NCBI RefSeq assembly: GCF_964204645.1
Contig: NC_134031.1
Location: forward strand, 16,231,807 to 16,295,806
Length of the DNA stretch: 64,000 nucleotides
Reading direction: 5' to 3'
DNA from: Tubulanus polymorphus
Lineage: Eukaryota; Animalia; Nemertea
The translations under genes were made by a program, and so were the position numbers. Positions within the stretch are counted from its first letter, which is position 1. Each line of letters begins with the position of its first letter. The notes below the pieces were generated by a model. The model had not been told where the DNA came from, did no database searches, and saw nothing but the letters and a program-made list of their open reading frames with translations. This document shows, in pieces, positions 917 through 57,482 of this stretch.

Positions 917-2060
917 CTTTCCTTTCTATCCGTTTTTCAAGCAGAAATTCAACACAATCGAGTCTAAATTCTCGTTTACATACAGAAAATTCGTCGTAAT
1001 CGAAGGTGACGTGTTACCAGTAGTACTATTAAGCGCACGAAACCGATGGGTTTATAAATTGAATTGAATTTATCTTATCCGGCTTATATTAATTTTTATA
1101 GGGAAACATAGGCGCTATTGCACTTTCGTTCATTCTCCCAAAAATGTTTATTTCTGCATATTATCCAGCTAGGAAGCCGATATTATTGTGGAAACCAAAT
1201 ATGGTGATGAATGTTCCAGTAGCATTAAATTCAGCAACATACTTTTTGTCCAAAAGCAAAATTCTAAAATGAGGCGTCATCAAACGTTTTCACTGATTTG
1301 AAGTTACAACTAGAGTAAACTAGGATCAGATGGACATAAACTACCATGGACATTGTCATCGGTCCCTATTCGAAAAGTGGCCACTGCTGGATCTCCTTGC
1401 CCAAGGGATCGGGCGACCTGGTCAATTCTACAACACAAGTTGGGTGATTGATTATTTTTGAAAATCAGCTCTGCGATTATGCATTGCATCTAATTTTGTA
1501 TTGAGCTTCAGAATAAGTTGAAAATAACGATTGCAGATTTTAAGATTTTTCTGAATATCTTGAATGAACTCTTTTACTTTTACATGGGATTCAGAATATA
1601 ACACGCGAAAATTGTATCGTCGGCACGTTTACCGTCATTACCCAAACCCCGGAACGAATGCAAAGCCGGAGTGAGTTAATAACGACAATTTATATGTGCG
1701 ACAAAGATAATGATACCGTATATACCGAAGGTTTCGAAAGTTTTGATAACGGCCTTTGAAATTGTTCAGGCATAATCAATAGCTGTAGTGTGTAGTTTAC
1801 ATCTCTATTTCGTCAGATTGGTCAGAGATCAGTCATCTCATCTCACTCTTACACAACACACATTCTAAATCGTCGTTATTGTTTCGTAATTTAAACCATT
1901 AAAGAAACGAGATATTTGATTCATGACAAGATAAGGTTTCAAAGGTTGTTTTGGCATTTAATCTCTCTCTACACGATCATACCCGGATTGTCGGTATCAC
2001 GACTGTAAGTAGGAAAGATTCAATCTCGTGTGTTCTCCGAAATCAGTTAGCTTTGCGACG

Positions 2061-3305
2061 ATGTTAAATGCTACGGTTATAAGGGCATGGTTTAAATCTG
2101 CGCTGAAATATAAATGGTTTACAGACACTGTATATCCCTACGTTCAATTGTCTCGTTTTTATCTGGTAAATTTCGTCGAGCCCGTCGTTTATCACCTGGC
2201 TTTTATTTTCAACATTTTCACGATAATCGTTTTACTAAAATGTCGAAGAAAACAGTCCGTACGCTGTACTTTCAGTTATCTTTTCACGTTGGCCATTTGC
2301 GACTTTATCTACGTCTGTACCCGACTGAAGAAGATGCCACTTCTCATCATCAGCGCGCTTTCATTCATCTTCAAAAGATCACATATCTCCGATTGTAAAG
2401 TGTTGGATATCACGTTGTCCGATTTAAATCACGACTTCGATATTAGGTATCATCTGCCTGATTATCCAAATTGCCCAAAAAGTGCACAGTATTACTTCAA
2501 ATTATATTTCTTCATTGAGGCAAAGTACCCGCTATGCGTAGTTTATCAATGGCTAAGGCCGTTAACCCCGGTTACTAACTGGATTATTGTTCTCATCGCC
2601 GGTGAGAGATTTCTGTCGATTAAAGCACCTTTTACCCATAGAAATATTTTCACCGTTCGTAACGTCAGTCGCACGACCCTCAGCTGCGCGTTAGTAACGT
2701 TTTGCTACGCACAAAGCGCTTTCGAACTATTCATACGTAATTACCCGCGCAAAGGAAAAACAACGGTCTGGTTTAACGGAAAAAATCGAACTTTAATCAA
2801 CGAAAACGTCGTTTTCTGGGTATGCACGACGGTTCCAGGGGTCAGTCTCACCAGAAATCAAAGTCGTCTGCTATATGCGATTAATTACATCATCGGCGAA
2901 TTTGTTCCGTCGCTTCTCATCATGATCATAACGCCATTGACCGCTCTATCGTGGTCGAAAAAATCGGACATATCCTCGACACGCGCTCGAACGAACAGAC
3001 ACGCTAACAAAACGTTACTTTACGTAACGTTTGAATTCTTGATTCTCGTGGCCCCGTATTCAGTTTGTATATCACTAAACTCAATCGGCTCGTACTTAAT
3101 ACCGAAAAGACCGCTCGTGTACCTGCTTCCGCCGGAAGTACCTTTCTACTTGTCAAACCTATCGACTATCGTCGGTAGGGCGTTCGAATTTTTCCGAAGA
3201 ATGATTTATTGCATTAATTTTTTCATCTATCTTCACACGATGCCGGTATTCAGAAAAACATTTATAGAGCTCTTCGTTTTCAAGCGTCGACGAATTTGTA
3301 AATAG
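2061..3305 (+). CDS. Intronless rhodopsin-class 7TM GPCR, peptide/chemosensory-like (GPCR-A copy 1, 414 aa from first in-frame ATG)
   Basis: Seven hydrophobic segments; TM2 LAICD, TM3 GERF (DRY equivalent), TM7 INFFIY, helix 8 FRKTF. The ORF track uses a GTG start at 2028; the first in-frame ATG is 2061. Confidence 0.88.
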   Translation: MLNATVIRAWFKSALKYKWFTDTVYPYVQLSRFYLVNFVEPVVYHLAFIFNIFTIIVLLKCRRKQSVRCTFSYLFTLAICDFIYVCTRLKKMPLLIISALSFIFKRSHISDCKVLDITLSDLNHDFDIRYHLPDYPNCPKSAQYYFKLYFFIEAKYPLCVVYQWLRPLTPVTNWIIVLIAGERFLSIKAPFTHRNIFTVRNVSRTTLSCALVTFCYAQSAFELFIRNYPRKGKTTVWFNGKNRTLINENVVFWVCTTVPGVSLTRNQSRLLYAINYIIGEFVPSLLIMIITPLTALSWSKKSDISSTRARTNRHANKTLLYVTFEFLILVAPYSVCISLNSIGSYLIPKRPLVYLLPPEVPFYLSNLSTIVGRAFEFFRRMIYCINFFIYLHTMPVFRKTFIELFVFKRRRICK

Positions 3306-3772: not shown

Positions 3773-4738
3773 TCATTCCCTATACCCTGGCTTGAACCTG
3801 GGCCTGGTTCTAAAGCCTTTACGAAGATGACTTCGAAATGAATTCGAAGATATGAAATAAACGAAGAAATTAACCGCAGAATTCATGCTTATCGGGGCAC
3901 CAGAAATCCAGTATAACATTCCATCGGGCGCGATCCTTCTAATGTACTCAAAATCCGTTTGATTTACTATCAGAAATATAATTCTAGGGATCATAAGGAG
4001 AAGCATCAACGCCGATATTATAATAGTTATTCGGGTCAGTGAATTTTCCGCTGCAGTCTTTACATTCGCGGATGATGTCATCGTTTCGCGTTGTTTGGAA
4101 GTTTTACCCAGGCCATGAATGATGGCTGTATTTGCTACGATGATTAAGGTTATTGGTAACATGAATTCAATAATCAATTGTGAAGTAGCAATGTAAACAT
4201 TGATTCTTCGGCCGTTTATCGATGTCAACGTGCAATCTAAACGTCCGTCCACACGTTTGACAAACATGACCATTGCGAAACATCGAATGAACTGTAAAGA
4301 GCCGACCAATGAGGATACAAGAAATGCTTTTCTCGGGTTACACAGTTGTGCTGCTTTCAAAGGGAATTGAATGACCAACGCTCGGTCGATGCTTAACAAG
4401 GACAGCACGATATTCGAAGAGGATGAACCAAGATACAACGAAAACATAAAGAACTTGCAGAAAACATCGCTTATCACGTGTTCAGGCAGAACGACACGAA
4501 CGAATAATACCGGCAAGTAAACTGAAACGACGAATAGGTCCATCAGCTCCAATACAATCATATATACACCGGTAGAAGTGCGTCTGAAATCCCGGTGCGC
4601 CGCCAAAACCCACAGCGCCAGTAAGTTACCGATAGTACCGACCAATGACGTGCACGGAATCATCACATAGATAACGACAAATTGTATCACTGCTACCCAT
4701 CCAATTGGACCCATCCTCGCTTCAAGCGTCGTATTCAT
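3773..4738 (-). CDS. Intronless rhodopsin-class GPCR, peptide-receptor-like (GPCR-B, 321 aa)
   Basis: TM1 GTIGN, TM2 LELMD, TM3 C...LSIDRA, ICL2 FPLKA, TM5 P, TM7 NSAVNFFVY, helix 8 FR; N-glycosylation site in MNTT; AATAAA on the minus strand at 3475-3480. Confidence 0.9.
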   Translation of the reverse strand: MNTTLEARMGPIGWVAVIQFVVIYVMIPCTSLVGTIGNLLALWVLAAHRDFRRTSTGVYMIVLELMDLFVVSVYLPVLFVRVVLPEHVISDVFCKFFMFSLYLGSSSSNIVLSLLSIDRALVIQFPLKAAQLCNPRKAFLVSSLVGSLQFIRCFAMVMFVKRVDGRLDCTLTSINGRRINVYIATSQLIIEFMLPITLIIVANTAIIHGLGKTSKQRETMTSSANVKTAAENSLTRITIIISALMLLLMIPRIIFLIVNQTDFEYIRRIAPDGMLYWISGAPISMNSAVNFFVYFISSNSFRSHLRKGFRTRPRFKPGYRE

Positions 4739-5290: not shown

Positions 5291-5963
5291 TGACATGAAG
5301 CAGAATTGCAACAACTAAACAATAGATCGGACCTTTCTCCGACCTCCTCAACTCCATATTCAACTTGGGGTGTGATTAAGTTTTCGTTAAAAAAAGCAGA
5401 TTGATTAACCTCTTCTAATTTTATGATAAGCATCGGAATGAGATGAAAACAACGATCGTGTGAGATATTTCTGAACATATACTTGAATCTTTTATTTTAT
5501 TTATCGGTCAGATCATAACTCCACGAAACAATGTATGATCTTCGGGTTAAAATACCGTCATTACCCAAACCCAAGAACGACTGCAAAGCCGGAGTGAGTT
5601 GATAGCGACAATTTATATGTGCGACAGAGATAATGATACCGTATAATATATCGTTATATGTTTCTCAACTTTTGATAGTGGCCATTGAAAATGTTCAGTG
5701 CGTAATCGATAGAGTATAACATCTCTATTTCGTCAGATTGGTCAGAAGATATTGCATCATCGCGCTCTTACGCAATACACTTTCAAAATCATTATTGTTT
5801 CATGAAACATAAGAAACGAGATATTTAATTCATGACAAGATAAGGTTTCAAAGATTTTTTGGCATTTAATCTCTCTCACACGATCTATACCCGGATTGTC
5901 GGTACCACGAAGAGGAACGATTCATATCTCGTGTGTTCTCCGAAATCAGTTAGCTTTGCGACG

Positions 5964-7205
5964 ATGTTAAATGCTACGGTCTTAAGCGCATGGTTTAAAT
6001 CTGCGCTGAAATATAAACGGTTAACAGATAGCGTTTATCCGTACGTTCGACTGGCTCGTTTTTATCTAGTATATTTCGTCGAGCCCGTCGTTTATCACCT
6101 GGCTTTTATTTTCAACATTTTCACGATAATCGTTTTGCTAAAATGTCGAAGAAAACAGTCCGTACGCTGTACTTTCAGTTATCTTTTCACGTTGGCCATT
6201 TGCGACTTTATCTACGTCTGTACCCGACTGAAGAAGATGCCACTTATCATCAGCGCGCTTTCATTCATCTTCAAAAAATCATATTTCTCCGAATGTAGAG
6301 TATTGGGAATAAGGTTGTCTGATGAAAATCGTGACTTTGACGTTGGGCATTACCTGCCTGATTATCCGAGTTGCCCAAAAAGTGCACAGTATTACTTCAA
6401 ATTATATTTCTTCATTGAGGCAAAGTACCCGCTATGCGTAGTTTATCAATGGCTAAGGCCGTTAACCCCGGTTACTAACTGGATTATTGTTCTCATCGCC
6501 GGTGAGAGATTTCTGTCGATTAAAGCACCTTTTACCCATAGAAATATTTTCATCGTTCGTAACGTCAGTCGCACGGCCCTCAGCTGCGCGTTAGTAACGT
6601 TTTGCTACGCACAAAGCGCCTTCGATCTGTTCATTCGTACTTATCCGCGAAAAGGAAAAACAACGGCCTGGTTTTACGGAAAGAATCGAACTTTGACCAA
6701 CGAAAACGTCGTTTTTTGGGTATGCACGACGGTACCAGGGGTCAGTCTCACTAGAAATCAAAGTCGTCTGCTATATGCGATTAATTACATCATCGGCGAA
6801 TTTGTTCCGTCGCTTCTAATCATGATCATAACGCCATTGACCGCTCTATTGTGGTCGAAAAAATCCGACATATCCTCGACACGCGCTCGAACGAACAGAC
6901 ACGCTAACAAAACGTTACTTTACGTAACGTTCGAATTCTTGATTCTCGTGGCCCCGTATTCAGTTTGTATATCACTAAACTCAATCGGCTCGTACTTAAA
7001 ATCGAAAGGACTGCTCCTTTACCTACTTCCGCCGGAAGTACCTTTCTACTTGTTAAACCTATCGTCTATCGTCGGTAGGGCGTTCGAATTTTTCCGAAGA
7101 ATGATTTATTGCATTAATTTTTTCATCTATCTTCACACGATGCCGGTATTCAGAAAAACATTTATAGAGCTCTTCGTTTTCAAGCGTCGACGAATTTGTA
7201 AATAG
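5964..7205 (+). CDS. Intronless rhodopsin-class 7TM GPCR (GPCR-A copy 2, 413 aa from first in-frame ATG)
   Basis: Paralog of 2061-3305 at a ~3900 bp offset with the same motifs. About 37 substitutions plus a 1-aa indel by manual comparison. Confidence 0.88.
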   Translation: MLNATVLSAWFKSALKYKRLTDSVYPYVRLARFYLVYFVEPVVYHLAFIFNIFTIIVLLKCRRKQSVRCTFSYLFTLAICDFIYVCTRLKKMPLIISALSFIFKKSYFSECRVLGIRLSDENRDFDVGHYLPDYPSCPKSAQYYFKLYFFIEAKYPLCVVYQWLRPLTPVTNWIIVLIAGERFLSIKAPFTHRNIFIVRNVSRTALSCALVTFCYAQSAFDLFIRTYPRKGKTTAWFYGKNRTLTNENVVFWVCTTVPGVSLTRNQSRLLYAINYIIGEFVPSLLIMIITPLTALLWSKKSDISSTRARTNRHANKTLLYVTFEFLILVAPYSVCISLNSIGSYLKSKGLLLYLLPPEVPFYLLNLSSIVGRAFEFFRRMIYCINFFIYLHTMPVFRKTFIELFVFKRRRICK

Positions 7206-46623: not shown

Positions 46624-47284
46624 TATTAACCACGAATGTGCTCGGAGAACGCCCAAAACCGCGGTGATGAAGTGTCATAGTTTGACAATTCGGTCAAGGT
46701 CGTTGATACAGAAAAAGGGCACAGGGCTGACGGGCGCCTATAAAACTATACTACATCACTGGAGTGCGTCACTGTGATTTACGAGCATTAGGCTAATAGG
46801 AAATAATGCAGGAGAAAGTTTATTTATAGTTGTTGATATCACCCTTTTTACTGTTCTAGATAGGACGACTATGTGGTAGGCCCTAGTCCTAACAGTTTCA
46901 TCCTGTTGGTTTAATTATTAAATGTAAGTTATTTTATTGGAAATCTACTACAATTATGTCTCTCATTCTCTCAATACTTTACTTTCAATTACTTGCTCTT
47001 CTATGGTGATCCGTCAAATCAAATTAATTTCGTGGTAGTCTATATGGCCTCCCTCCCTTATCAAATGATTTTCCTATGACAACTAATTATTGTTGTGTAC
47101 AATAAGTTCACTACAGTACTACTGATCTACGTCAACGAGGTAAATTAACTCAATTTCGGAAAAAGGTCTCTGTTTGTTTAGATCGCAAGAAGAATTAACA
47201 AGTTTAATGTTCGTAAATCGTTCTACTTATTGAATTACCCGTTACAATGTCATCTTATATCAAACCTTTCAATTTCAGAATAAC

Positions 47285-50200
47285 ATGTCGCACGACTCAT
47301 TACCTTCCACTTTAACAGGGCAGATATCCCTGGGTAGTGGTTACTTATGGCGACAAACTTCGATTATGAAAATATGGGAACGAATTTTACTTCATCTGAC
47401 GGTGAGAGGTGCGACTGGTGAAACATACTGTCTCTCTGATAAAGATGACAATTTCAAAGTTGAGGTAGATATCAGGAAATCAAATATCAGAGTATCACAT
47501 AAGAATTTTGATACAAATTACCTATGTATGTATCTGGGTCCCTAAGACTCCTCGATTCCATAAAAACTCCTTTCAAATGGAAAACAAGACTTTACAGGTA
47601 TATACTTGAAACTTCTTCGATTTCAGCAAAATACTAGCCTTTAAAACTTGTAACATATCCATGAAAGTTATATATTGGCACACTCCCATCAGTAACCTAT
47701 ATCTACTAGGTCATATTATGTAGTACAGCTTCTTTTTTACTTTCTCTTATGCTGCAACCGCCATTTTAATGACATGTAGACACAAATATATCAGTTAATA
47801 TCAAGACAGTGTTTTCTTGTGTATATCATAGTCTAGAGGAAACTATTAGTTTGTACTTGTACGGTAAACTATCCCTAAATCGTTACAGTTGGGACCAGGA
47901 TTTGTTTTTACCCAATTAGGCGGTTACTGATTAAGAAACCGAGATTGGTTAGTGTGTTAGATAACAAATTTGCTTACTAAACCTCTGAATTAACGGTTTA
48001 CTGAGATAAACAATGCCGATTTAGGAGAAGTCTACAGCAAATGGGATATGAAAGTGATGCAAACCCTTCCTTGAAATTTTCTCATTTAAAACTATTTGAA
48101 AACTCCTTATCTCCAGGAATGACCGATCAGTAGGGACCCTGTGTATGTATGTATGTATGTATGTATGTATGTATGGGTATTGGTTTGCCTGCTCAGTCAT
48201 TGATAGCGGATCCATTATCATTTTCAAATGCCATAAAAACAGTGTAAACTTATCAGCTAGTTTGATACAGTAGACATTATAACCGCGCTATCTTTCTTTT
48301 ATTGCTTTTTACTGGTAGATTTCCGAAAATTAATATTGTCAAATTTTGATTGTTTTTCTCCTTCAAGTTTTATCGCGCCGAAGTGTTTGTGGTGATGTCG
48401 AAGAAAAAGGCCAAAGACAATCTGACGTTTCTCGTGAAATTCGAACGCCGCCAGAAAAAATCCATGGAATGGAAATTCAGAGCCGCTAACATCCAAGAGT
48501 TAAGAGAGTGGCTAATAAGATTTGGCGTCAGGGAACGTGGACTGTACTCGAACGGAGATCCGACTGTAGCTGTTAGTATAACATCCACCTGCTTTTCTTA
48601 ACGGGTACCAGCAAAGCTACTGCGGCAAGTGAAATTCCACCCGAATCCACCAGGTTTCAGTCAAGACGTCAATCCTGTATTAGTTTTACTTTGTAATTGA
48701 GTACGACAGCCACAAACCAAGCTGTATTTGTTCTTCAACTGAATCAAAATCTAGCAATGATTTCTCAAATGATATGGATGATGTACGAAAAATGTGCTAT
48801 TTAATGCACTCTTATTATGAGTAATCTGAATATTATATAGATGCTTGATTTTCCTAATTTTTGGATCGGGATCAATTGGGGAAAACTTGAGATCAAAGTT
48901 GATGATAATGAACAAATTTTGATCGAGTATATCTCTTCTGATAGTTAAGTGGCGCGATCTGTGGGAGTAGCTGGGTTCGCTGGTACTGCCGGAGTAGCTG
49001 AGTATACTGGTACTCCTTTCCTTTAATCACTAAATGTATGTGTGTTATTTTTCATATTTGGTAATCAGCCTGTCGAGAGCTGGATCGGCAAATGGGACGT
49101 CATCCATCCAGACATGATCACCTCACAGTTACAGAATGCTGAAACGGAAGCTATTATCAGTAGACATACGCAAAGACAAGAACTGCCACCTAGTGATGAA
49201 TTACCGACGTATGAACAAGCTATCGGATGGATGCCGTGGGTTGTGGAAGCGACTACGGTATGTCTGTTGATGGATGGAGTATTTATGATTCGATGAAGGA
49301 ATGAACTGCCCGGGGCCCTTCACTCTTTAATGCATTCCTAAAGAAATGGAGAAAAAGTATCCACTTCACTGGGGTAGAAAACATTACCGCATATAATCTA
49401 GGCCCTTTTTTCGTTTGTCGAAAAGAATTGTATCATCAAAAGCATTGTCATGAAAAGCGCGGTCTGCAAATTTTTTGGATCTGGGAAGAGGATGTCCTGT
49501 TATCTTACTTAAGAAGAAGTGAAGGCCCCGGGAAAAATTGCTTTCTTCTTTCACCACGTTGATAACAATACTGAATGTAGTACGATGAATTCTTATGCGT
49601 ATTTATTTAGCAAAGACCTGAAACTGGGCTGTCATTGAGACCATTACCGGAATTCGTTCAAGTAAGACGACAGTTCGACGATAGTTTTCTACCTCCGATG
49701 GCAGCTGCCGTTAAGTGGCCAGTCAGCATCGGTATCGGCGAAGAAATCGGTCTTCCGACGGATGTGCAACAAATCTGGTGTTCGGATACTAATCGGTACA
49801 TGTACATGAATCACAGTAGTAGAGAAGTATTCTGGGAGGACCCGCGCCCTCCGAAGTCTCCGGTTCCGGTCGTCAGTTTGAAAGTGAGTTTTTCGAGCTA
49901 GTTGTAAGATAAAAACCGACTACATACGAATAAAGATTTGAAATTAAAATTATGGTCGAGAGTAGAATTTTAAAAATGACGCATAATGTTTTGGACTCTC
50001 TAAAGACCACTGCCAAGTAGTCTCTACAGAGAGTTCGAAACATTGTGTCCATAAATTTTCTATTTTGATTCTTAAGATTAAAAGAAATGATTTTGCAAAT
50101 TGTTCTAAATAGAGGGTTTTAATCTTATTATTGATTCTCCATATCTGATTGCGGCTATTCTACCTTTAATTGAGTGAATTCCATCTAATTTGAGTGTTAT

Positions 50201-53200
50201 TTTTCAGCTTTCTTTCACATACGTTATTTTAATTAAGATTTTCGATGATTATGATCACTATTTACTTTAAGCAAATACATGTTGGTGACAACCGGAAACT
50301 GCGCATTAAAGTATCACCTTTTGCCACTACTACCCTGGTTGATCTACAGAATATTGTCATAGAAGGAAAAATCAAGGTATCTAACAGGGGCGTACAGCAA
50401 GGGGGTTTATTCAAACCACCCAAATCCGAAGAAGGTTTTGAGGGTTTGACGATGTAGATCGGGGACACCCCTGTCTAGGCCTACTGTGCGTTACTTAACA
50501 AACACTTCATTACACACAGTACACAAGGCATTAACGTGCTGTTTATGTTTTTGAAAAGCCTCACGGAGTTGAGATTAAGGCAGATGGTATAACTGGTGCC
50601 CACGGTAGAGAAGGTCAACGTGGGATTTGCGGTTATCGTGGTGAGGACGGACGAGATGGTGAGTAGATATCCTTATTAGGATGAGTACCCGTATTGTGCA
50701 TTTGTTTCGATGTTAAAGTTTTTTCTGCATTGTAGGAATTTCTAAGGGAAGTCACGGATCTGCCGGCCATAAAGGCGGTCCAGGGGGTCCTGGTGAAAGG
50801 GGCGCGTGTGGTCTAGTCGGTACAAATGCTAGTGATTTGGATATATCTATCGATGGCGACGCATCTGCATTAGCAGTTCATGGCACAGTTGATGTTGTCG
50901 CATGTCTTGGCGGATTGAAAAATGAACATGTGCTCTATCTGGATGCTCGAGGTGGAGATGGAGGCAGAGGTGGAGATGGTGGAACAGGTACTCAGATTTT
51001 AATTAATAAAATAAATATCAGCAATTTTTCCAGTGACAACAGTACTAAGTTATTAGTTTTTTCTAAGTTATTAGGTTTTATTGCTGATCTACCCTCTTGA
51101 AACTGTTTATGATTATTTTTTAATTACATTCATGAATCAGTGCCAAGGTGTTTGTTAACATCTTTAAGATTGTTTTATTCGGAATATGCCGAAGAAACCA
51201 GATGAGATTATAACCTCTTTGTAACTTTAAGAGGTGTTTATTTGATAACAGGAGGTACTGGTGGAAGTGGAGGTCGTGGAGGTGATGGCGCGAAGGGTCA
51301 AAGAGGTCACAATGGTTATTCAACTGGTGCTAGAGGTGGTAAAGGAGGTACCGGAGGTGATGGAGGTCCTGGTGGAGATGGAGGAGATGGTGGTCGCGGT
51401 GGAGATGGAGGTAATGGAGCTTGGTCTGGTGATGGCGGGGATGTCAGTGTTACTGCTTATGATCCATTGCTATTTATGTTATGTGAGGTCAGTCTTTCTA
51501 TAATTCTGTGTCGATAAACCTGATTCCGATTTTCGATATGATTTACACGTTTTTCAAATTACAGGTGGATGCATGTCCCGGAATTCCTGGAAGACATGGT
51601 GACGGAGGTCACGGGGGTGCTGGTGGTTTGGGTAGTCCAGGAGGTATTGGTGGACGAGGTGGTCGTGGTGGTAGTGGTGGATCAGGCGGCGTCAACGGCT
51701 CGTCTGGTAGTTCTGGTTCGAGAGGAGACCCTGGCCTCAATGGTAGGTTCATAGATACATCTGTCTACATTAGTCGTAGGTCATTTTCTATTTCACCATA
51801 TTGTTTGGCTTTGTTTTGATAACTGCTGGATAATTACTGCTTTGTTTTAGGTCGGAATGGACATAGTGGGTGTCCTGGATTAGCTGGGAGGGATGGTATA
51901 GATGGAAAGTCTGGAATGTGTGGTAGTATCATTTGGAAACTGATGGATCCTGCATCCAAAACTATTGTCTTAGAGACTGGAACTCGGTATAACTTGCTTA
52001 CTCAAACGTACACTGTAAGTGTAGCATATCTAATGATATTGAAAAGAATGAATGCACAACACATTTTAGACTGAAAGTTTGAATCAGAATTGAAATGTGA
52101 ATAAAAAGTTTATTGCCAGTTAATTGCAATATTTCAATACTTTATTGAGTAAAAGGCCATGAAATAATATGTTAAGTTTCCTTCTAAGAGATCATAAATA
52201 CGTAATAAATGAATGATCCCTAAGTATGAGTGTGATTTGAATCTAACTGTCATTTAGGTGAGTTCAGAGATCGATGATGGAATATTTGAACCGAATGAGA
52301 GAATATTTGTGTCCGATGTTTTAGTGATGAATATCGGTGGAATGTTTGCACCGGCCGGAGCACAAGTTCATTTCCCGTCTACGAACACCGTCAATTTCCA
52401 TCCCATCGTTCATACATTGCCGAGGGTAAATATAGAATTCCTGTCTAGCAGATGTTATTTGGAAAATACGTATCTGAAATCGAATGGAAATAATTCGAAG
52501 GAATTGTTGAAAAAAAATGTATTTTTGATAAACATAATATGATCGCAAAGTAATTATATGTATAACCAGAAAATAATACTGGTATGATGACAATACCTTT
52601 ATGTATATTGAAAATAAGAAGCCTGAAGAAAGTCTTGGAAGTACGAACTATGCGTTTTCCTGAGGTTCGGTACAATCAAGCATGCCTAGCCCATGAATGC
52701 ACAGCCTTTTAAAGGTGCCTCACTACCAGATACTGACGATCCTAGACGGATAAATAACATCCAATTCACAGGGCTCTAAACAAAATAATTTTTTAATGTA
52801 GATGGAAATAAATGAGGAGTGGATGGTACCGACTAGATATATCGGTCGTATCCGTGACATTTCGTCTCCCAATTGTCCGGGTCCGTACATTGGAGAAGCA
52901 ACTGTCGAATCAAGAGTTCACGTAATGAACAGACCATTCTACGCAGTAAGTTTGATGATCTTAGGAAGAAACAACCAAAATTCAATCATCAATAGTAGTT
53001 AATGATTTGCTAACTTTAATGCTTATTTATAGGGTTTTAATAAAGTAACTTTAAAAGTGCAGTATCCTATAAAAATAGAGGGACTGAAAGTGCCTAGTCA
53101 GATGGGCAGAGGTGAAGAGGCAAACGTCACAGTTATAGTAAGTTTCACTTTTGACATGCACTTACCCTTTCAAATTTCTGTTTCAACTCATCGTTCTAAT

Positions 53201-56200
53201 TTCGTAGTTGAGAAATATATCTACGATGCGTTATGGAGAAGGTTCAGATAGCGGTGGATTCATTGAGGTCAAGGTAAATCTAAAATGCTTTCAAATTTAA
53301 AGAAAGTTTCGATCCGAAATTTCACAGAGCGTCTGCCTTTATTCAGCTTCGTTTAGATCGACGATTGTTACCAGTTCCGAGGGCAGATATGATGCAAAAT
53401 AGACTGTTACCTTACTCCATGACCTTTGATCCGGCCCAGCGGGACAGCGTTTTGATAAAAGTAAGTGAAATGGTTTAGCATTGGACTTCATGATAAACTA
53501 TTTCCAATTTTTGATGTAAGCCTACTTATCATTGTAGATTTTGAATATTGATGCCAATTCAACGCTGGAAATTACGATACCCGTCTATGTCGAAGGAAAG
53601 TCTGAACTTTTTGAAAGGATGCTTTTACAGTCGGACCTGTTTCTGGTAAGCTATTCGCTATGGATCTCGTGAACATCTATACCGTGAGAAGGCGCCAAAT
53701 CGAAATTAGCAGCAAGTCAACCAAAACACAACGCAATACTCTTCATATATTTCAAGTAACATTAAAGCACAGGTTGTCTTAGTATGAACTAGTTATTCGG
53801 GTTTTATCAGGAGCCAATTTCACAAACTAGTGACCCTAAGTCTACGATTCCTACTGGCGGTGTTTTTGTTACTTGGTTTTCAAGATTCCCCACAGGAAAA
53901 TATCACAAGAAGTGAAATCCTGTGATATTAAATCAACTTTTCAACTGACAGCTGGTCATTTAACAATAAACGTACACAATGGAAGAATCCCAGTTTTTGG
54001 TTCGACTCCATTTTCATAGCCTTTCAATATTTGTTACTTGGTTTTCAAGATTCCCCACAGGAAAATATCACAAGAAGTGAAATCCTGTGATATTAAATCA
54101 ACTTTTCAACTGACAGCTGGTCATTTAACAATAAACGTACACAATGGAAGAATCCCAGTTTTTGGTTCGACTCCATTTTCATAGCCTTTCAATATTTCAT
54201 CCTTGAGCAAACCTAAGCCTTAACCCCCAAAGATTAATTTCAATTATAGTGAATGAATGATAATTAATCTAAAAGCTTGGATAACACATTTTCTGCGACA
54301 CCCGGTAGTAAAATCCTATAAAATTTATATGTATTCAATTATTTGCTTCGAATTAATTTTCTTATTTCACAGCGAGGAAAACTGATCGAATATCAACAGG
54401 AATTCATTCGCGTGTGTCCGTATTACGTGAAACGCGAGCCGCCCGGCGACGTGCTGTTCATCACCGGGCCGCAGATTTCGCGACATCGATTCATCATGTG
54501 GCAAACTTTATTCGAATATCTAAACGTAACGCTCGATTTCTGGGATACGGAACGTTACGGAGGCGTTTCTTGGAATTCTCGTCATCAACGTCATGATGTA
54601 CGTATACCATACTGCGCGTCGATCGAACTGTAAACCTTTTCTAACTCGGACCGACATAATTGGTCTGAGGTTAGCAAAGTTGAGGATAGGAAAATATGTT
54701 AGTCAGAAAAATCATTTCCAAGTTGGTCATGTCCGATTGAGGTGAGGTTTACTGTATCAGAACACCAGGGGCCGGTTTCACAGTTGTTGTTTAAATTTGA
54801 CTAAAGAATTTAAATCAGTTCATTTTCTATATTCTAACCCTCGAGGAGCCGGATCCCTTAGTTCTTATTTTGTCAGTTTGTAGAAATCCCTTGGTGTATC
54901 TATTTTACATTTAGCCTCTTGAGGAACACCTAATGTCTATTTCAACTTTGTTTGTGAACGTCAGGTTGCCTATCTCAGTTAGTTTTAGTAGTACATACCT
55001 GATATAGGTCTTGATAAGACCAAAATGGATGGGTAGTTGATTTTTTAAAAGGATTTTACTCTGTATTCAACGATTACCAAAAATCCTCCTTTGAATGTTG
55101 AAATGGACATTAGTAATGAAACCTATATACCGCTGACCGCATTAGTTATCATATAGCGATGGTATGAGTCGGCGCGCTCTTATCAAATCTTTGCGAATCG
55201 ATGTTAAAATCTTTGAATTCTTCGTTTGTTGCTTCAGGTGAGCTGGGTTAATCGGTATCGCGGCCGGCTTATCGTCTACCCACTAGCCAACATATACTCA
55301 TTCAACCCCGACGACATCGCGTCTCATTTTTGCGACGAAGAATTTCTCAGTCAAGATTCCGGAATGTTGCTGCTGAGTAAGGATTTCTCCAAAAGCAAAT
55401 ACATGTCTTTGGCTATGATGACGCATTTGGCGCGGTCGGTTACACCGGTCAATGTCGATGAGTTATACAGGGGATCCCATCTATGTCACCCGAAAAGTTG
55501 TTGTGTCCCTGGAAAACCAGCACAATCGTAAGTTTCACTCTGTATTCTAGCGTCACTCTAGTTTTTTCTATTGAGTGTACCCGCTACGTTGTTAAGCTAC
55601 TTATACACTAGTAGCGAAAGCTCGTACTTTTAAAAGAATCAAGTTTATCTTCAAAGAAATTTTTGTCTTAACGTTTGCTGACTCGCAAATTTTTTCACTA
55701 TAAAGTATCCCATTCAAAATAAGATTAACAAAATTTAAGAATCGAATAGCCAAGGGTGAGTTTTATAGACTGATATTATCTTACCCTGGGGGCTAACTCA
55801 ATTAATTTGCAACCGAGTTAACCCCTGTGTTAAAGCTAATACTGGTCTATAAAACCGACCCCAGGAAGTTAGGTGGAATCAGTCCACTCAGAACATGCAT
55901 CCTGTTTATTCCCAATTCCTGTGTCTGACAGCAATCCATATTTAAAGGTTCCGTACCTAGACAACATTCTCGCTACATAACATTATTTAGCTGAACAGAG
56001 CAAAATAAATTTTCTCGCAATCACATTGCAGGAAAGCTAAAAAGATTTTCAAATTCGTCGAGAAAATTCACCCCGAGTATGGGCACGTGATATTCAACCA
56101 GACCATCGATTATAAAAAGTTACGCGGATTGTTGTATAGTTACGGTCATCTAGATCTACGACGCCTGCCTGTAGGTCGTTCGTCACGGATGTTGCTCGCT

Positions 56201-57482
56201 TACGATCCAAATCTCATGAAATTAGGTGAGGATGACGCTTGCCACACACCAGCAGCCACCGAAGTTCCTCTCGCTAGTTTTTTCGGACAGGTAAAACTGT
56301 AGAATACTGCCGTATTAGACCTCATGATGAACTAATCCAGGGTCCCTACAGATCGATCATTCTTGAATACATATATAAGGATTTTAAAGGAGAAAATTTC
56401 AAGGAAATGTCTGCATCACTTTCATATCCCAATTACTTATTTCTCAGTAAACCATGAATTCAGTGGTTTTGTAAGCAAATTTCTATTACTGGGTAATAGC
56501 CCATTTCTCAAAATTGAAGGAGTTTTAAAAGCATTTTTGGCATTTTGCTCGAATTAAAGGTGTTTCAAACTTATTGAAAAGCATTTTCTGTTAAGAGGAG
56601 TTTTTAAGGAATCAAGGAGTCGTATAGGGACCATATTACATTTATAATGACTATTTGAATCTACGTATTGTAGGTGATGCTTATGGTAATCCAAGGACTT
56701 CCATTGTCGAAGAAAATAGAATTGTTGAATCCTGAACTGCTGAGCACTCCTCGACCGAAATTCGTGACACCGAAAGGCGATGAATTTACATTAAGACAGC
56801 TCATAGCGGTGTCTCTAGAAGAGCATTTACTTTATGAAGTGATGGCTAAACTAAAGGTTGAATAGATATTAGTTGTATGATATATACCAAAGCTATATTC
56901 ACTACGATAGGCAGATAAAACAAACGGCTAGTTAGTTACCTAATCTTTGGTGATAAGCTATTAAAATTGGATGGGCTTAATGAAAATTATCCGATCATGT
57001 AACAAACGGCGTGCTTGAATTACTGCAGTGAATGTATTTTTCAGGCTTCCGATTTGGTGCAACGACTCATCGAAGAGGTGACGGCGCAACCAGATTATTT
57101 CAGCGGTGAAGATGTTGGTCCGTATATATATCTAGCGTTGATGTCATTGATGAAAGCGGCCGACGATTGTCCTTCGAGCTACCGATGTCAAATAAAAGAT
57201 CGTTTCGAACAGATTTACAACATACTGAAACAGGTATGCGATGCAATCGTTCGCGAGTGGATGCGCTTGAATCATTGAAATTTCATAACGTATTTAATGT
57301 TTCTATTACAGAACGACGGCGCGCATAAAGAGTACAAGAATCAAGCGAAGAAGATGCTGTCGGATAAAGCGCGCATCACGTTTCAAATATTGTTGAATCA
57401 AAAGAATCTGATTCATTGCCATCGTTTGATGTTCAAAGACAAAATGTACGACCTCAAACATGCAGCTGATGCAGAGGTTTAA
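47285..57482 (+). CDS. Uncharacterised ~1,300-aa protein: PH domain, LPTY (PY) motif, WW-like domain, Gly-X-Y/(GGX)n glycine-rich region, beta-sandwich-like and alpha/beta C-terminal regions; 22 coding exons
   Basis: Phase-consistent exons approx. 47285-47464, 48368-48571, 49069-49257, 49611-49883, 50272-50376, 50559-50658, 50736-50987, 51252-51487, 51565-51742, 51851-52014, 52258-52425, 52802-52945, 53033-53137, 53208-53273, 53347-53460, 53538-53645, 54373-54597, 55238-55527, 56032-56290, 56674-56856, 57045-57233, 57312-57482. PH: GYLWRQTSIMKIWERILL ... FRAANIQELREWL. WW: LPTDVQQIWCSDTNRYMYMNHSSREVFWEDPRPP. Confidence 0.85.
48143..48174. repeat. (GTAT)n microsatellite
   Basis: Direct read; abuts the end of a CAGGGTCCC-family element. 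Confidence 0.9.
53866..54196. repeat. Perfect 165-bp tandem duplication in an intron
   Basis: TTGTTACTTGGTTTTCAAGATTCCCC...CTTTCAATAT at 53866 and again at 54031. Confidence 0.9.

What the first reader, a model, noticed from the sequence alone, without database searches (positions are those of the whole stretch)
47285..57482. Uncharacterised ~1,300-aa cytosolic protein: PH + PY motif + WW + collagen/polyglycine rod + beta-sandwich core
Seen: an intact 22-exon ORF with no signal peptide or obvious TM segment. It has an N-terminal PH domain, LPTY, a WW-like domain, then Gly-X-Y triplets (GAHGREGQRGICGYRGEDGRDG) and long (GGX)n runs interrupted by short hydrophobic strands (VLYLDARGGDGGRGG; GDGGDVSVTAYDPLL; EVDACPG). 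These are followed by RYNL...DDGIFEPNERIFVSDVLVMNIGGM and ~600 further residues. Known: PH binds phosphoinositides, WW binds L/PPxY, and animal collagens are secreted. Inference: I recognise no described animal family with this architecture. The Gly-rich + DG.FEP.E + N.GGM core recalls uncharacterised fungal/microbial proteins (from memory, unverified), so this may be a patchily distributed ancient or horizontally acquired core fused to metazoan membrane-targeting modules.
Basis: partly seen in the sequence, partly recalled or inferred. Interest (0 to 1): 0.8.

Follow-up and report, generated by a model that had tools for sequence, protein, structure and literature searches.

The report
Uncharacterised PH–WW–glycine-rich DUF7932 protein gene
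This is a real, expressed 22-exon gene for a 1,300-residue cytosolic protein of an old family that nobody has studied, found in sponges, worms, protists and some predatory bacteria; its parts can be named but its job cannot.

Summary
A 22-exon, 3,903-nt ORF (1,300 aa) lies on the + strand at 47285-57482. Spliced RNA contigs confirm introns 1-12 and the start of exon 14. They also put the PH/WW exons and the glycine-rich exons on one contig.

The protein has four parts:
- N: a divergent PH-like domain, a conserved (L/P)PxY motif and a WW-like domain that lacks the first signature Trp.
- G: short Gly-X-Y runs and two GGX blocks of about 70 aa.
- D: Pfam DUF7932 plus a second Ig-like sandwich.
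- C: about 450 aa with no Pfam family.

AlphaFold2 models of the Lineus relative are confident (pLDDT 93). C is a flavodoxin-like α/β part plus a helical bundle, with no clear match among solved structures.

Full-length relatives occur in Lineus, Owenia and the sponge Oopsacas. The G-D-C core alone occurs in an amoebozoan (with FYVE), other protists (with PH+SAM) and probably fungi. Bacteria also have it, as proteins with signal peptides: 31 of 301 sampled Bdellovibrionota and 6 of 301 Myxococcota genomes.

The animal sequences form one clade nested among eukaryotes. This points to an old, patchily kept family, not a recent transfer. Function is unknown. My best guess is a membrane-recruited, possibly trimeric binding scaffold. 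I found no paper on the family.

The parts
47285..47464 (+). Exon 1 (60 codons): start codon and first half of the PH-like domain. A 5'UTR exon lies further upstream; its acceptor AG is at 47277-47278.
   Evidence: RNA joint 47464|48368 and contig record 25, which runs 306 nt upstream of 47279. Aligns to Lineus P0001 residues 8-56.
48368..48571 (+). Exon 2: second half of the PH-like domain, including the C-terminal helix with the conserved Trp (ELREWL).
   Evidence: RNA joints. Pfam PH E 0.042, profile positions 61-98. Family profile hits PH domains in the PDB, E 0.003.
49069..49257 (+). Exon 3: linker with the LPTY motif, in the conserved (L/P)PxY column of the family.
   Evidence: RNA joints. 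Alignment A5 shows PPxY/LPxY in most members.
49611..49883 (+). Exon 4: FLPP motif and the WW-like domain (LPTD...NH...FWEDPRP). The second Trp and the Pro are present; the first signature Trp position holds Val.
   Evidence: RNA joints. Pfam WW E 0.035. Family profile hits the KIBRA WW domain at E 2.4e-5, and also MAGI2 and NEDD4.
50272..50376 (+). Exon 5: linker between the WW-like domain and the glycine-rich region.
   Evidence: RNA joints 49883|50272 and 50376|50559.
50559..50658 (+). Exon 6: eight Gly-X-Y triplets (collagen-like run). Ends in phase 1.
   Evidence: RNA joints. Triplet count. The family profile hits collagens only in this stretch.
50736..50987 (+). Exon 7: further Gly-X-Y triplets, a beta-strand segment (VLYLDARGG) and the start of GGX block 1. 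Contains a heterozygous block at 50789-50929.
   Evidence: RNA joints. Contig records 25 and 26 meet here.
51252..51487 (+). Exon 8: GGX block 1 (a run of nine GGX triplets) and the strand DVSVTAYDPLLFMLCE.
   Evidence: RNA joints. GGX runs. Glycine positions are invariant across the family.
51565..51742 (+). Exon 9: VDACPG, then GGX block 2.
   Evidence: RNA joints..
51851..52014 (+). Exon 10: last Gly-X-Y triplets and the first strands leading into the DUF7932 sandwich.
   Evidence: RNA joints. tblastn with P0001 residues 533-582.
52258..52425 (+). Exon 11: first half of DUF7932 (DDGIFEPNE...NIGGM).
   Evidence: Pfam PF25560 E 7.8e-13, 49.4 bits. The genome search on the own genome 50.8 bits, single copy. 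RNA joints.
52802..52945 (+). Exon 12: second half of DUF7932.
   Evidence: RNA joints. tblastn.
53033..53137 (+). Exon 13: end of the first Ig-like sandwich and start of the second.
   Evidence: RNA joint 52945|53033, and a loose end at 53137 that continues into exon 14.
53208..53273 (+). Exon 14: second Ig-like sandwich (NIS..YG motif).
   Evidence: The loose-end consensus equals 53208 onward. tblastn with P0003 and P0004.
53347..53460 (+). Exon 15: second Ig-like sandwich.
   Evidence: GT..AG and phase 0. tblastn with P0007, P0015 and P0003. No RNA check.
53538..53645 (+). Exon 16: end of the second sandwich (AELFER motif).
   Evidence: GT..AG and phase 0. tblastn with P0001 and P0004. No RNA check.
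54373..54597 (+). Exon 17: beta-hairpin and first beta-alpha-beta of the C domain. Carries the family signature VLFITG..ISR..F..W......L.V.LDFWD..RYGG.
   Evidence: 84 library hits at E<=1e-3. The signature is shared with bacterial homologues.
55238..55527 (+). Exon 18: flavodoxin-like alpha/beta part of the C domain. Ends in phase 2.
   Evidence: tblastn. Model m5d62656d44c2.
56032..56290 (+). Exon 19: beta-sheet part of the C domain (YSYG..D.RR.P).
   Evidence: tblastn E 1e-12 with P0001.
56674..56856 (+). Exon 20: start of the helical part of the C domain.
   Evidence: tblastn with P0001 residues 1070-1130.
57045..57233 (+). Exon 21: helical bundle.
   Evidence: tblastn with P0001 residues 1138-1242 spans exons 21-22.
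57312..57482 (+). Exon 22: last helices and the stop codon at 57480-57482.
   Evidence: The alignment reaches the C-terminus of P0001. Sequence read.

Best explanation
Shown: this is one expressed gene, single-copy in this genome, encoding a 1,300-aa protein with no signal peptide or transmembrane segment. It is an orthologue of the Lineus and Owenia 'uncharacterized'/'PH domain-containing' proteins. It belongs to an uncharacterised family with the architecture N-G-D-C:
- N: PH-like domain, (L/P)PxY motif, WW-like domain.
- G: short Gly-X-Y runs and two GGX blocks with position-invariant glycines.
- D: DUF7932 plus a second Ig-like sandwich.
- C: a flavodoxin-like alpha/beta part plus a helical bundle, with the signature VT...TR.E..W...D.WD..YG.

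G-D-C is one inherited unit. It is shared with protists and with bacterial proteins that carry signal peptides.

Inferred, not shown:
- The protein acts in the cytosol at membranes. The PH-like domain here, and FYVE or PH+SAM in protist relatives, would bring the G-D-C unit to phosphoinositide-bearing membranes.
- The PY motif and the WW-like domain give a regulated contact, either within or between copies or with NEDD4-type ligases.
- The Gly-X-Y runs may trimerise the protein.
- The GGX blocks form a compact polyglycine-II-type bundle and not a flexible linker.
- The C domain is a binding or assembly module and not an enzyme, because no catalytic-type residue set is conserved between eukaryotes and bacteria.
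For: - Gene model and single transcript.
- Single copy.
- DUF7932.
- Collinear orthologues; closest is Lineus P0109, about 50% identity over 16 exons.
- PH-like: Owenia Pfam PH E 1e-4; best member 1.7e-5; the family profile's top PDB hits are all PH domains.
- WW-like: KIBRA E 2.4e-5.
- PY column conserved.
- 37 invariant glycine columns in the G region. In the AF2 model the GGX blocks have pLDDT above 90 but no helix or strand.
- D is tandem Ig-like: HAP2 domain 3 Z 10.8, ILRUN/NBR1 FW Z 9.6, pilin/cohesin Z 8-9; Foldseek E 9e-6.
- C model: pLDDT 92.7, pTM 0.91. Only weak flavodoxin-like, ThuA, receiver or TIR matches at Z<=6.6, helical matches at Z 7.6, and no Foldseek hit below 1e-3.
- Other membrane or signalling modules on the same core: FYVE x3 in Paradermamoeba and an EF-hand protein; PH+SAM.
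- Bacterial homology of the whole core.
Against: - No experiment or paper exists for any member.
- PH and WW both fall below Pfam's gathering scores, and the WW-like domain lacks the first signature Trp, so lipid or PY binding may be lost.
- The Gly-X-Y runs are short and interrupted (8 plus about 9 triplets). Trimerisation was not tested.
- The polyglycine-II reading rests on the lack of DSSP helix or strand at high pLDDT, not on backbone angles. The tool does not return coordinates.
- The structures are of the Lineus orthologue, not of the window's protein.
- Bacterial relatives carry signal peptides, so the core's native setting may be extracellular. Its cytosolic role in eukaryotes is inferred only from the attached domains.
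Confidence: 0.6

Rival explanations
1. The C domain is an enzyme, for example a hydrolase, amidotransferase-like or nucleotide-processing flavodoxin-fold enzyme. The rest of the protein only positions it on membranes.
For: The alpha/beta part resembles flavodoxin-like folds that include enzymes: ThuA-like Z 5.9, receiver Z 6.6, TIR Z 5.6. Atlas leads point to GATase1-like domains. Asp, His and Ser are nearly invariant in eukaryotes: D38, D70, H118 and S129 of the C alignment.
Against: H118 and S129 are not conserved in the bacterial profile. Only the VT/TR.E/W/D.WD/YG signature is shared. S129 precedes a strand instead of sitting on a nucleophile elbow. There is no Pfam, NCBIfam or PDB sequence match. 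All fold matches are below Z 8.
Confidence: 0.15
2. The family is a cell-autonomous sensor or effector acting on engulfed microbes at phagosomes or endosomes. This would explain its retention in phagocytic amoebae, sponges and marine worms, and its presence in predatory bacteria.
For: PI3P-binding FYVE domains in the amoebozoan relative. PH-like domain here. Patchy distribution across eukaryotes. Homologues with signal peptides in Bdellovibrionota.
Against: This is purely circumstantial. There is no PADLOC hit, no defence-island context in the bacterial loci, and no expression or infection data.
Confidence: 0.1
3. The core was recently acquired by horizontal transfer into this animal lineage from bacteria or fungi, and was then fused to PH/WW exons.
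For: Bacterial and probably fungal homologues exist.
Against: The gene has 21 introns in the coding region. Full-length N-G-D-C orthologues exist in a sponge, a nemertean and an annelid. All N-bearing sequences form one clade (SH-aLRT 99) nested in eukaryotes and separate from the bacterial clade (SH-aLRT 99).
Confidence: 0.03
4. These are two adjacent genes, a PH/WW gene and a Gly-rich/DUF7932 gene, wrongly read as one.
For: None found. The transcript assembly does break inside exon 7.
Against: The break coincides with a heterozygous six-SNP block, also seen in DNA. One spliced contig runs from the 5'UTR through exons 1-7, and the next runs from exon 7 onward. Orthologues in three phyla have the same single-protein architecture.
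Confidence: 0.02
5. It is a secreted collagen-like matrix protein.
For: Gly-X-Y runs hit collagen profiles.
Against: There is no signal peptide or transmembrane segment. The N-terminus is a PH-like domain. The collagen Pfam score is below threshold in every member. The triplet runs are short and interrupted.
Confidence: 0.02

Closest known systems
Predicted DUF7932 proteins of Lineus longissimus (LOC135493433, LOC135501411), Owenia fusiformis ('PH domain-containing protein') and Oopsacas minuta
   Same: Same N-G-D-C architecture and a collinear alignment over the whole length. Identity is about 50% (Lineus P0109), 47% (Owenia) and 41% (Lineus P0001) over the exons that match.
   Different: None in kind. 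All are computer-predicted and uncharacterised. Lineus has two paralogues, while this genome has one copy.
Bacterial DUF7932 proteins of Bdellovibrionota and Myxococcota (L006-L028)
   Same: Homologous G, D and C regions: HMM E down to 1e-58, and hhalign probability 99.5% for the C region.
   Different: The Bdellovibrionota proteins carry signal peptides and lack PH, PY and WW. Their C region is very divergent. They form a separate clade, except the single Myxococcota MAG L006.
WW domains of KIBRA, MAGI and NEDD4
   Same: Profile-level similarity (E 2.4e-5). The xNH(x)7W(x)2P core is present in the window.
   Different: The first signature Trp position holds Val. The score is below Pfam's threshold: 14.6 bits against 26.9.
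Polyglycine-II bundles or 'PGII sandwiches' (snow-flea antifreeze protein, phage gp38 adhesin tip, models of mycobacterial PGRS domains; PMC9436101, PMC11364801)
   Same: GGX triplet periodicity, and position-invariant glycines in a region that is modelled confidently without helices or strands.
   Different: No sequence or fold match was obtained, and backbone geometry was not checked. The known examples are secreted or virion proteins; this one is cytosolic.
Ig-like sandwiches: HAP2 domain 3, NBR1/ILRUN FW domain, macroglobulin and CARDB domains
   Same: The fold of DUF7932: Z 9.6-10.8, rmsd about 3 A, about 100-108 residues aligned.
   Different: Sequence identity is 10-14%. This is a generic fold and implies no shared function.

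Membership tests
DUF7932 family (Pfam PF25560), N-G-D-C type | Match to PF25560 above the gathering score | tested here: met
   Exon 11 alone scores 49.4 bits against a cut-off of 27, E 7.8e-13. The six-frame search of the genome gives 50.8 bits.
DUF7932 family (Pfam PF25560), N-G-D-C type | Collinear similarity to full-length members across the N, G, D and C regions | tested here: met
   tblastn of P0001, P0003, P0004, P0007 and P0015 against the window. Exon-by-exon blastp hits 16 exons in P0109.
DUF7932 family (Pfam PF25560), N-G-D-C type | C-domain signature vL.VT...TR.E..W...Lg...D.WD..yG | tested here: met
   Exon 17 reads VLFITGPQISRHRFIMWQTLFEYLNVTLDFWDTERYGG. Consensus.
PH domain (PF00169) | Pfam gathering score | tested here: not met
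   Exon 2 scores 14.8 bits against 25.1. The Owenia orthologue scores 23.2 bits, and 2 of 18 family N-regions hit PH, best E 1.7e-5.
PH domain (PF00169) | Profile similarity to solved PH domains, and the conserved Trp in the C-terminal helix | tested here: met
   The top 14 PDB hits of the family profile include 12 PH-domain chains (PLEKHB2 and SOS1 at E 0.003). The Trp is present in ELREWL of exon 2.
PH domain (PF00169) | Phosphoinositide binding | not testable with these tools
   Needs lipid-binding assays.
WW domain (PF00397) | Pfam gathering score | tested here: not met
   14.6 bits against 26.9, covering profile positions 7-31 only. 2 of 18 members hit, best E 0.004.
WW domain (PF00397) | Two signature Trp residues 20-22 residues apart, plus the Pro | tested here: not met
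   The first Trp position is Val in the window and non-Trp across the family. The second Trp and the Pro are present in the window (FWEDP). Other members have Tyr or Phe in place of the second Trp.
WW domain (PF00397) | Profile similarity to solved WW domains | tested here: met
   KIBRA E 2.4e-5, MAGI2 E 0.0085, NEDD4 E 0.04.
Collagen triple helix (PF01391) / animal collagens | Long uninterrupted Gly-X-Y run reaching Pfam's threshold | tested here: not met
   The window has 8 triplets in exon 6, then a break, then 3- and 4-triplet runs. Orthologues score 17.7-23 bits against 27.2.
Collagen triple helix (PF01391) / animal collagens | Secretion (signal peptide) | tested here: not met
   No hydrophobic N-terminus. 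Maximum KD19 is 1.5.
Polyglycine-II helix bundle | GGX or GXX triplet repeats with conserved glycine positions | tested here: met
   GGX runs of 3-9 triplets. 37 invariant Gly columns in the 17-sequence alignment A8.
Polyglycine-II helix bundle | Left-handed PPII backbone geometry with helices packed in a bundle | not testable with these tools
   Model coordinates are not returned. The only evidence is that the blocks have pLDDT above 90 and no DSSP helix or strand.
TIR, CheY-receiver or GATase1-like domains (candidates for the C alpha/beta part) | Significant fold or sequence match and the family's catalytic or signature residues | tested here: not met
   VIA Z 5.6-6.6 only. Atlas TM <=0.30 by the query. 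No Pfam or PDB sequence hit.

The most novel reading that the evidence does not exclude
G-D-C (polyglycine-II-type bundle, two Ig-like sandwiches, and a previously unseen flavodoxin-like plus helical domain) is a new kind of self-assembling, probably trimeric, membrane-acting module. Predatory bacteria secrete it. Eukaryotes have harnessed it in the cytosol by fusing it to PH, FYVE or SAM modules, for instance for phagosome or endosome surveillance or remodelling. It went unnoticed because the usual model organisms appear to lack it.
Probability: 0.12. Interest if true: 0.8.

Novelty: new member of a known kind. Interest (0 to 1): 0.5.

Why it matters
The gene is an ordinary member of its family, but the family is wholly uncharacterised. 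It has one DUF entry in Pfam, no solved structure, and no paper in the library searched.

Several features make it unusual:
- A glycine-rich fold of a kind so far described in secreted or virion proteins sits here in a cytosolic protein with lipid- and PY-binding modules.
- The 450-residue C domain is modelled with high confidence but has no clear match among solved structures.
- The same core occurs behind signal peptides in about a tenth of the sampled Bdellovibrionota genomes.

The family is therefore a good target for structural and cell-biological work, and a clean case of an old domain combination kept in sponges and marine worms. For annotating this genome, the result is a verified 22-exon model and a name: DUF7932 family, PH/WW-containing.

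Tried and rejected
- The word-index search (search for homologous proteins) with P0001 and with the core alignment A6 gave only 5 close relatives each and no fungal names.
An 8-sequence alignment worked.
- Pfam, NCBIfam and PADLOC gave nothing for the C domain or for the bacterial proteins beyond DUF7932.
- PDB sequence searches with profiles of the G and C regions gave only compositional collagen or linker hits, or nothing.
- Foldseek, VIA and Atlas searches of the C model gave only weak flavodoxin-like or helical matches.
- The VIA search of the G+D model was filled by Ig-like hits, so the glycine blocks were effectively not tested.
- By eye, the beta1-alpha1-beta2 signature looks like box 1 of plant TIR domains. 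That comparison is from memory. No sequence or significant fold support was found, so I dropped it.
- A conserved downstream zinc-ribbon ORF in 4 of 14 bacterial loci gave no functional clue.
- Literature searches for DUF7932 and for the domain combination found nothing.
Searches were made exon by exon, and the Lineus orthologue P0001 served as proxy for structure prediction. The window's protein is therefore not a row in the tree.


Full report
**1. The gene is real and is one gene.**

I read the + strand from 47.0 to 57.8 kb in three frames and the DNA itself. From these I built a model of 22 coding exons with GT..AG introns and consistent phases. The coordinates are in the parts list. The exons sum to 3,903 nt, giving 1,300 codons plus the stop at 57480-57482.

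Contigs of four public runs of the same organism were laid on 47200-53199. Three runs behave as DNA. The fourth, X4, gives spliced contigs. Its twelve joints coincide with my introns 1-12 once the stated cut offsets are applied. A loose end at 53137 reads straight into exon 14.

One contig of 1,446 nt runs from 306 nt of upstream 5'UTR through exons 1-6 into exon 7. A second contig of 2,329 nt starts in exon 7 and runs on through the DUF7932 exons. The break between them lies at a block of six heterozygous SNPs (50789-50929) that is also seen in the DNA contigs. It is therefore an assembly break, not a gene boundary.

The PH/WW exons and the first glycine-rich exons are on one spliced contig.

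Exons 15-22 have no RNA check here. They rest on consensus splice sites, phase and collinear homology.

No 19-residue window reaches a Kyte-Doolittle mean above 1.5, and the N-terminus is polar. There is no signal peptide or membrane span. DUF7932 occurs once in the 268-Mb genome.

Searches were made exon by exon, by reference.

**2. What the parts are.**

A Pfam scan of single exons gave one significant hit: DUF7932 (PF25560) in exon 11, E 7.8e-13. It gave weak hits to PH (exon 2, E 0.042) and WW (exon 4, E 0.035).

An exhaustive HMMER search with exon 17 found 84 proteins at E<=1e-3. About fifteen of them are 1,200-1,300 aa long. Local HMMs of four regions show a constant order: N (about 280 aa), G (about 290 aa), D (about 240 aa) and C (about 450 aa).

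*N region.* The family alignment shows four features:
- a PH-like domain, complete in the spiralian and sponge proteins;
- a conserved (L/P)PxY motif, which is LPTY in the window;
- a conserved FLPP..GPP motif;
- a WW-like domain.

The full-length profile hits the KIBRA WW domain at E 2.4e-5, and also MAGI2 and NEDD4. A profile of the first 125-160 residues has PH domains as its top hits, with PLEKHB2 and SOS1 at E 0.003. Owenia's protein reaches Pfam PH at E 1e-4. Both domains stay below Pfam's thresholds in most members.

The WW-like domain lacks the first signature Trp. The window does keep the second Trp and the Pro (FWEDP). I call them PH-like and WW-like.

*G region.* The window has eight Gly-X-Y triplets in exon 6, a break, and then a few more. 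Two GGX blocks of about 70 aa follow, separated by short strands. Each block contains GGX runs of up to nine triplets.

This is not low-complexity filler. In the 17-sequence alignment A8, 37 glycine columns are invariant.

*D and C regions.* I folded two pieces of the Lineus orthologue P0001 with family alignments.

Residues 352-805 (G and D) gave pLDDT 93.5. The GGX blocks score above 90 yet have no DSSP helix or strand. That is what a polyglycine-II type packing would give. I could not inspect coordinates, so this stays an inference.

The D part is two Ig-like sandwiches. DUF7932 matches HAP2 domain 3 at Z 10.8 and the NBR1/ILRUN FW domain at Z 9.6, and also macroglobulin and CARDB domains. 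The second sandwich matches pilin and cohesin domains at Z 8-9.

Residues 800-1243 (C) gave pLDDT 92.7 and pTM 0.91. The model is a beta-hairpin, a flavodoxin-like alpha/beta/alpha part, a small sheet and a helical bundle.
- Foldseek found nothing below E 1e-3.
- The exhaustive VIA search peaked at Z 7.6 on the helices and Z 5.6-6.6 on the alpha/beta part, with receiver, ThuA-like and TIR domains.
- The Atlas gave TM <=0.30 to GATase1-like domains.
- No Pfam, NCBIfam, PADLOC or PDB sequence match covers C.

**3. Who else has it.**

The named full-length relatives are:
- two Lineus longissimus proteins (nemertean);
- one Owenia fusiformis protein (annelid), which UniRef names 'PH domain-containing protein';
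- one Oopsacas minuta protein (glass sponge), which UniRef names 'DUF7932 domain-containing protein'.

Exon by exon, the window is closest to Lineus P0109 (about 50% identity, 16 exons hit), then Owenia (47%), then Lineus P0001 (41%).

The G-D-C core without N occurs in several other settings:
- in Paradermamoeba levis, with three FYVE fingers;
- in an unnamed protein with an EF-hand;
- on an intron-poor environmental contig, as PH + collagen-like + DUF7932 + SAM;
- on contigs whose neighbours are plainly eukaryotic, such as kinases, cofilin and oxysterol-binding protein.

An ESM-Atlas cluster of 68 DUF7932 proteins has mostly Ascomycota among its few labelled members. That is a lead only.

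*Bacteria.* A pattern scan of one genome per species found three loci. All three contexts are bacterial. One has GC 70% with planctomycete-type PSD domains and an FHA domain. The others have an NADH-quinone oxidoreductase subunit, patatin and HNH.

DUF7932 is over Pfam's cut-off in 31 of 301 sampled genomes of the Bdellovibrionota and in 6 of 301 of the Myxococcota. It is in none of 14 control genomes. These figures are for the genomes sampled, not for the whole phyla.

The bacterial proteins are 900-1,300 aa long and have G and D regions. The Bdellovibrionota ones have typical signal peptides, judged by reading their N-termini. Their C-terminal halves looked unrelated by HMM, but profile-profile comparison shows they are homologous to the eukaryotic C domain: probability 99.5%, E 7e-23, 296 columns. 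The shared signature is vL.VT...TR.E..W...Lg...D.WD..yG.

G-D-C is therefore one inherited unit in both domains of life.

**4. History.**

I built a quick maximum-likelihood tree of the D region plus the head of C: 75 rows, LG+C20+F+G4, SH-aLRT support, midpoint root for drawing only. No candidate row was dropped. The window is not a row, because that would need joined exons.

The tree splits a bacterial clade of 17 rows (support 99) from a clade holding all eukaryote-type rows (support 99). Within the latter, every N-bearing sequence lies in one clade of 33 rows (support 99), with spiralian and sponge subclades. The rows without N inside that clade start within the G or D region and are mostly truncated predictions. 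The protist-type proteins lie outside it.

The one exception is the Myxococcota MAG protein L006. It has a eukaryote-type full C domain and sits unresolved at the base of the eukaryotic clade. It is the only one of 301 sampled genomes of its phylum with such a C domain. Its composition was flagged as unusual.

The simplest reading has three parts. The family is old in eukaryotes, the PH/PY/WW fusion dates at least to the common ancestor of sponges and bilaterians, and many lineages have since lost the gene. A recent transfer into this animal is not supported. The direction of any bacterium-eukaryote transfer cannot be read from an unrooted tree.

**5. How it most likely works.**

Nothing is known experimentally. 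No paper mentions DUF7932 or this domain combination.

All the accessory domains are cytosolic. They are of the membrane-lipid or signalling kind: PH-like here, FYVE, PH+SAM and EF-hand elsewhere. I therefore infer that the conserved G-D-C unit is brought to phosphoinositide-bearing membranes.

The conserved (L/P)PxY motif lies next to a WW-like domain. This suggests a regulated contact of three possible kinds: within the molecule, between copies, or with NEDD4-type ligases.

The Gly-X-Y runs could nucleate trimers, as in bacterial collagen-like proteins. They are short, and this was not tested.

No catalytic-type residue set is shared between the eukaryotic and bacterial C domains. I therefore favour a binding or assembly role over catalysis. 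An enzyme (0.15) and a role against engulfed microbes (0.1) remain open.

**6. Verdict.**

It is partly wrong: the family is already recorded in animals as predicted proteins, and the gene is not a transfer fused to specifically metazoan modules.

The gene is a new member of a catalogued family that has never been studied. Interest is moderate. The family is a good target because of three things: its confident but unmatched C-domain model, its cytosolic glycine-rich fold, and its relatives with signal peptides in predatory bacteria.

Noticed in passing
window 53865-54194 (intron 16): A perfect 165-bp tandem duplication: two copies at 100% identity.
   Followed up: partly
window 47966-48091 (intron 1) and 56382-56482 (intron 19): Inverted copies of a dispersed repeat, 89-90% complementary. 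DNA contig depth rises several-fold at 47800-48200, so the element is multicopy. A (TGTA)8.5 microsatellite lies at 48142-48175.
   Followed up: partly
window 50789-50929 (exon 7): A heterozygous block of six SNPs (50819, 50847, 50863, 50868, 50869, 50899). It is present in both DNA and spliced RNA contigs, so both alleles are expressed. It splits the transcript assembly in two.
   Followed up: partly
window 2028-3305 (+), 3773-4738 (-), 5859-7205 (+): Three long intronless ORFs that look like seven-transmembrane receptors. The first and third are near-duplicates. I did not search them.
   Followed up: no
L006:4414-7983 (Myxococcota MAG, GC 70%): A bacterial protein with a eukaryote-type full C domain. 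It is unique among 301 sampled genomes of its phylum and sits at the base of the eukaryotic clade. It is a candidate inter-domain transfer of unknown direction.
   Followed up: partly
L011:10703-11584, L012:6069-6995, L016:5748-6707, L019:10777-11739: In 4 of 14 bacterial loci searched, all four of them Bdellovibrionota, a ~300-aa ORF with a weak zinc-ribbon match follows the DUF7932 gene directly on the same strand.
   Followed up: partly
G003 (L008:4873-8031): One Bdellovibrionales copy of the gene is interrupted by a single TAA. A second copy in the same genome is intact (open frame of 1,221 aa).
   Followed up: no
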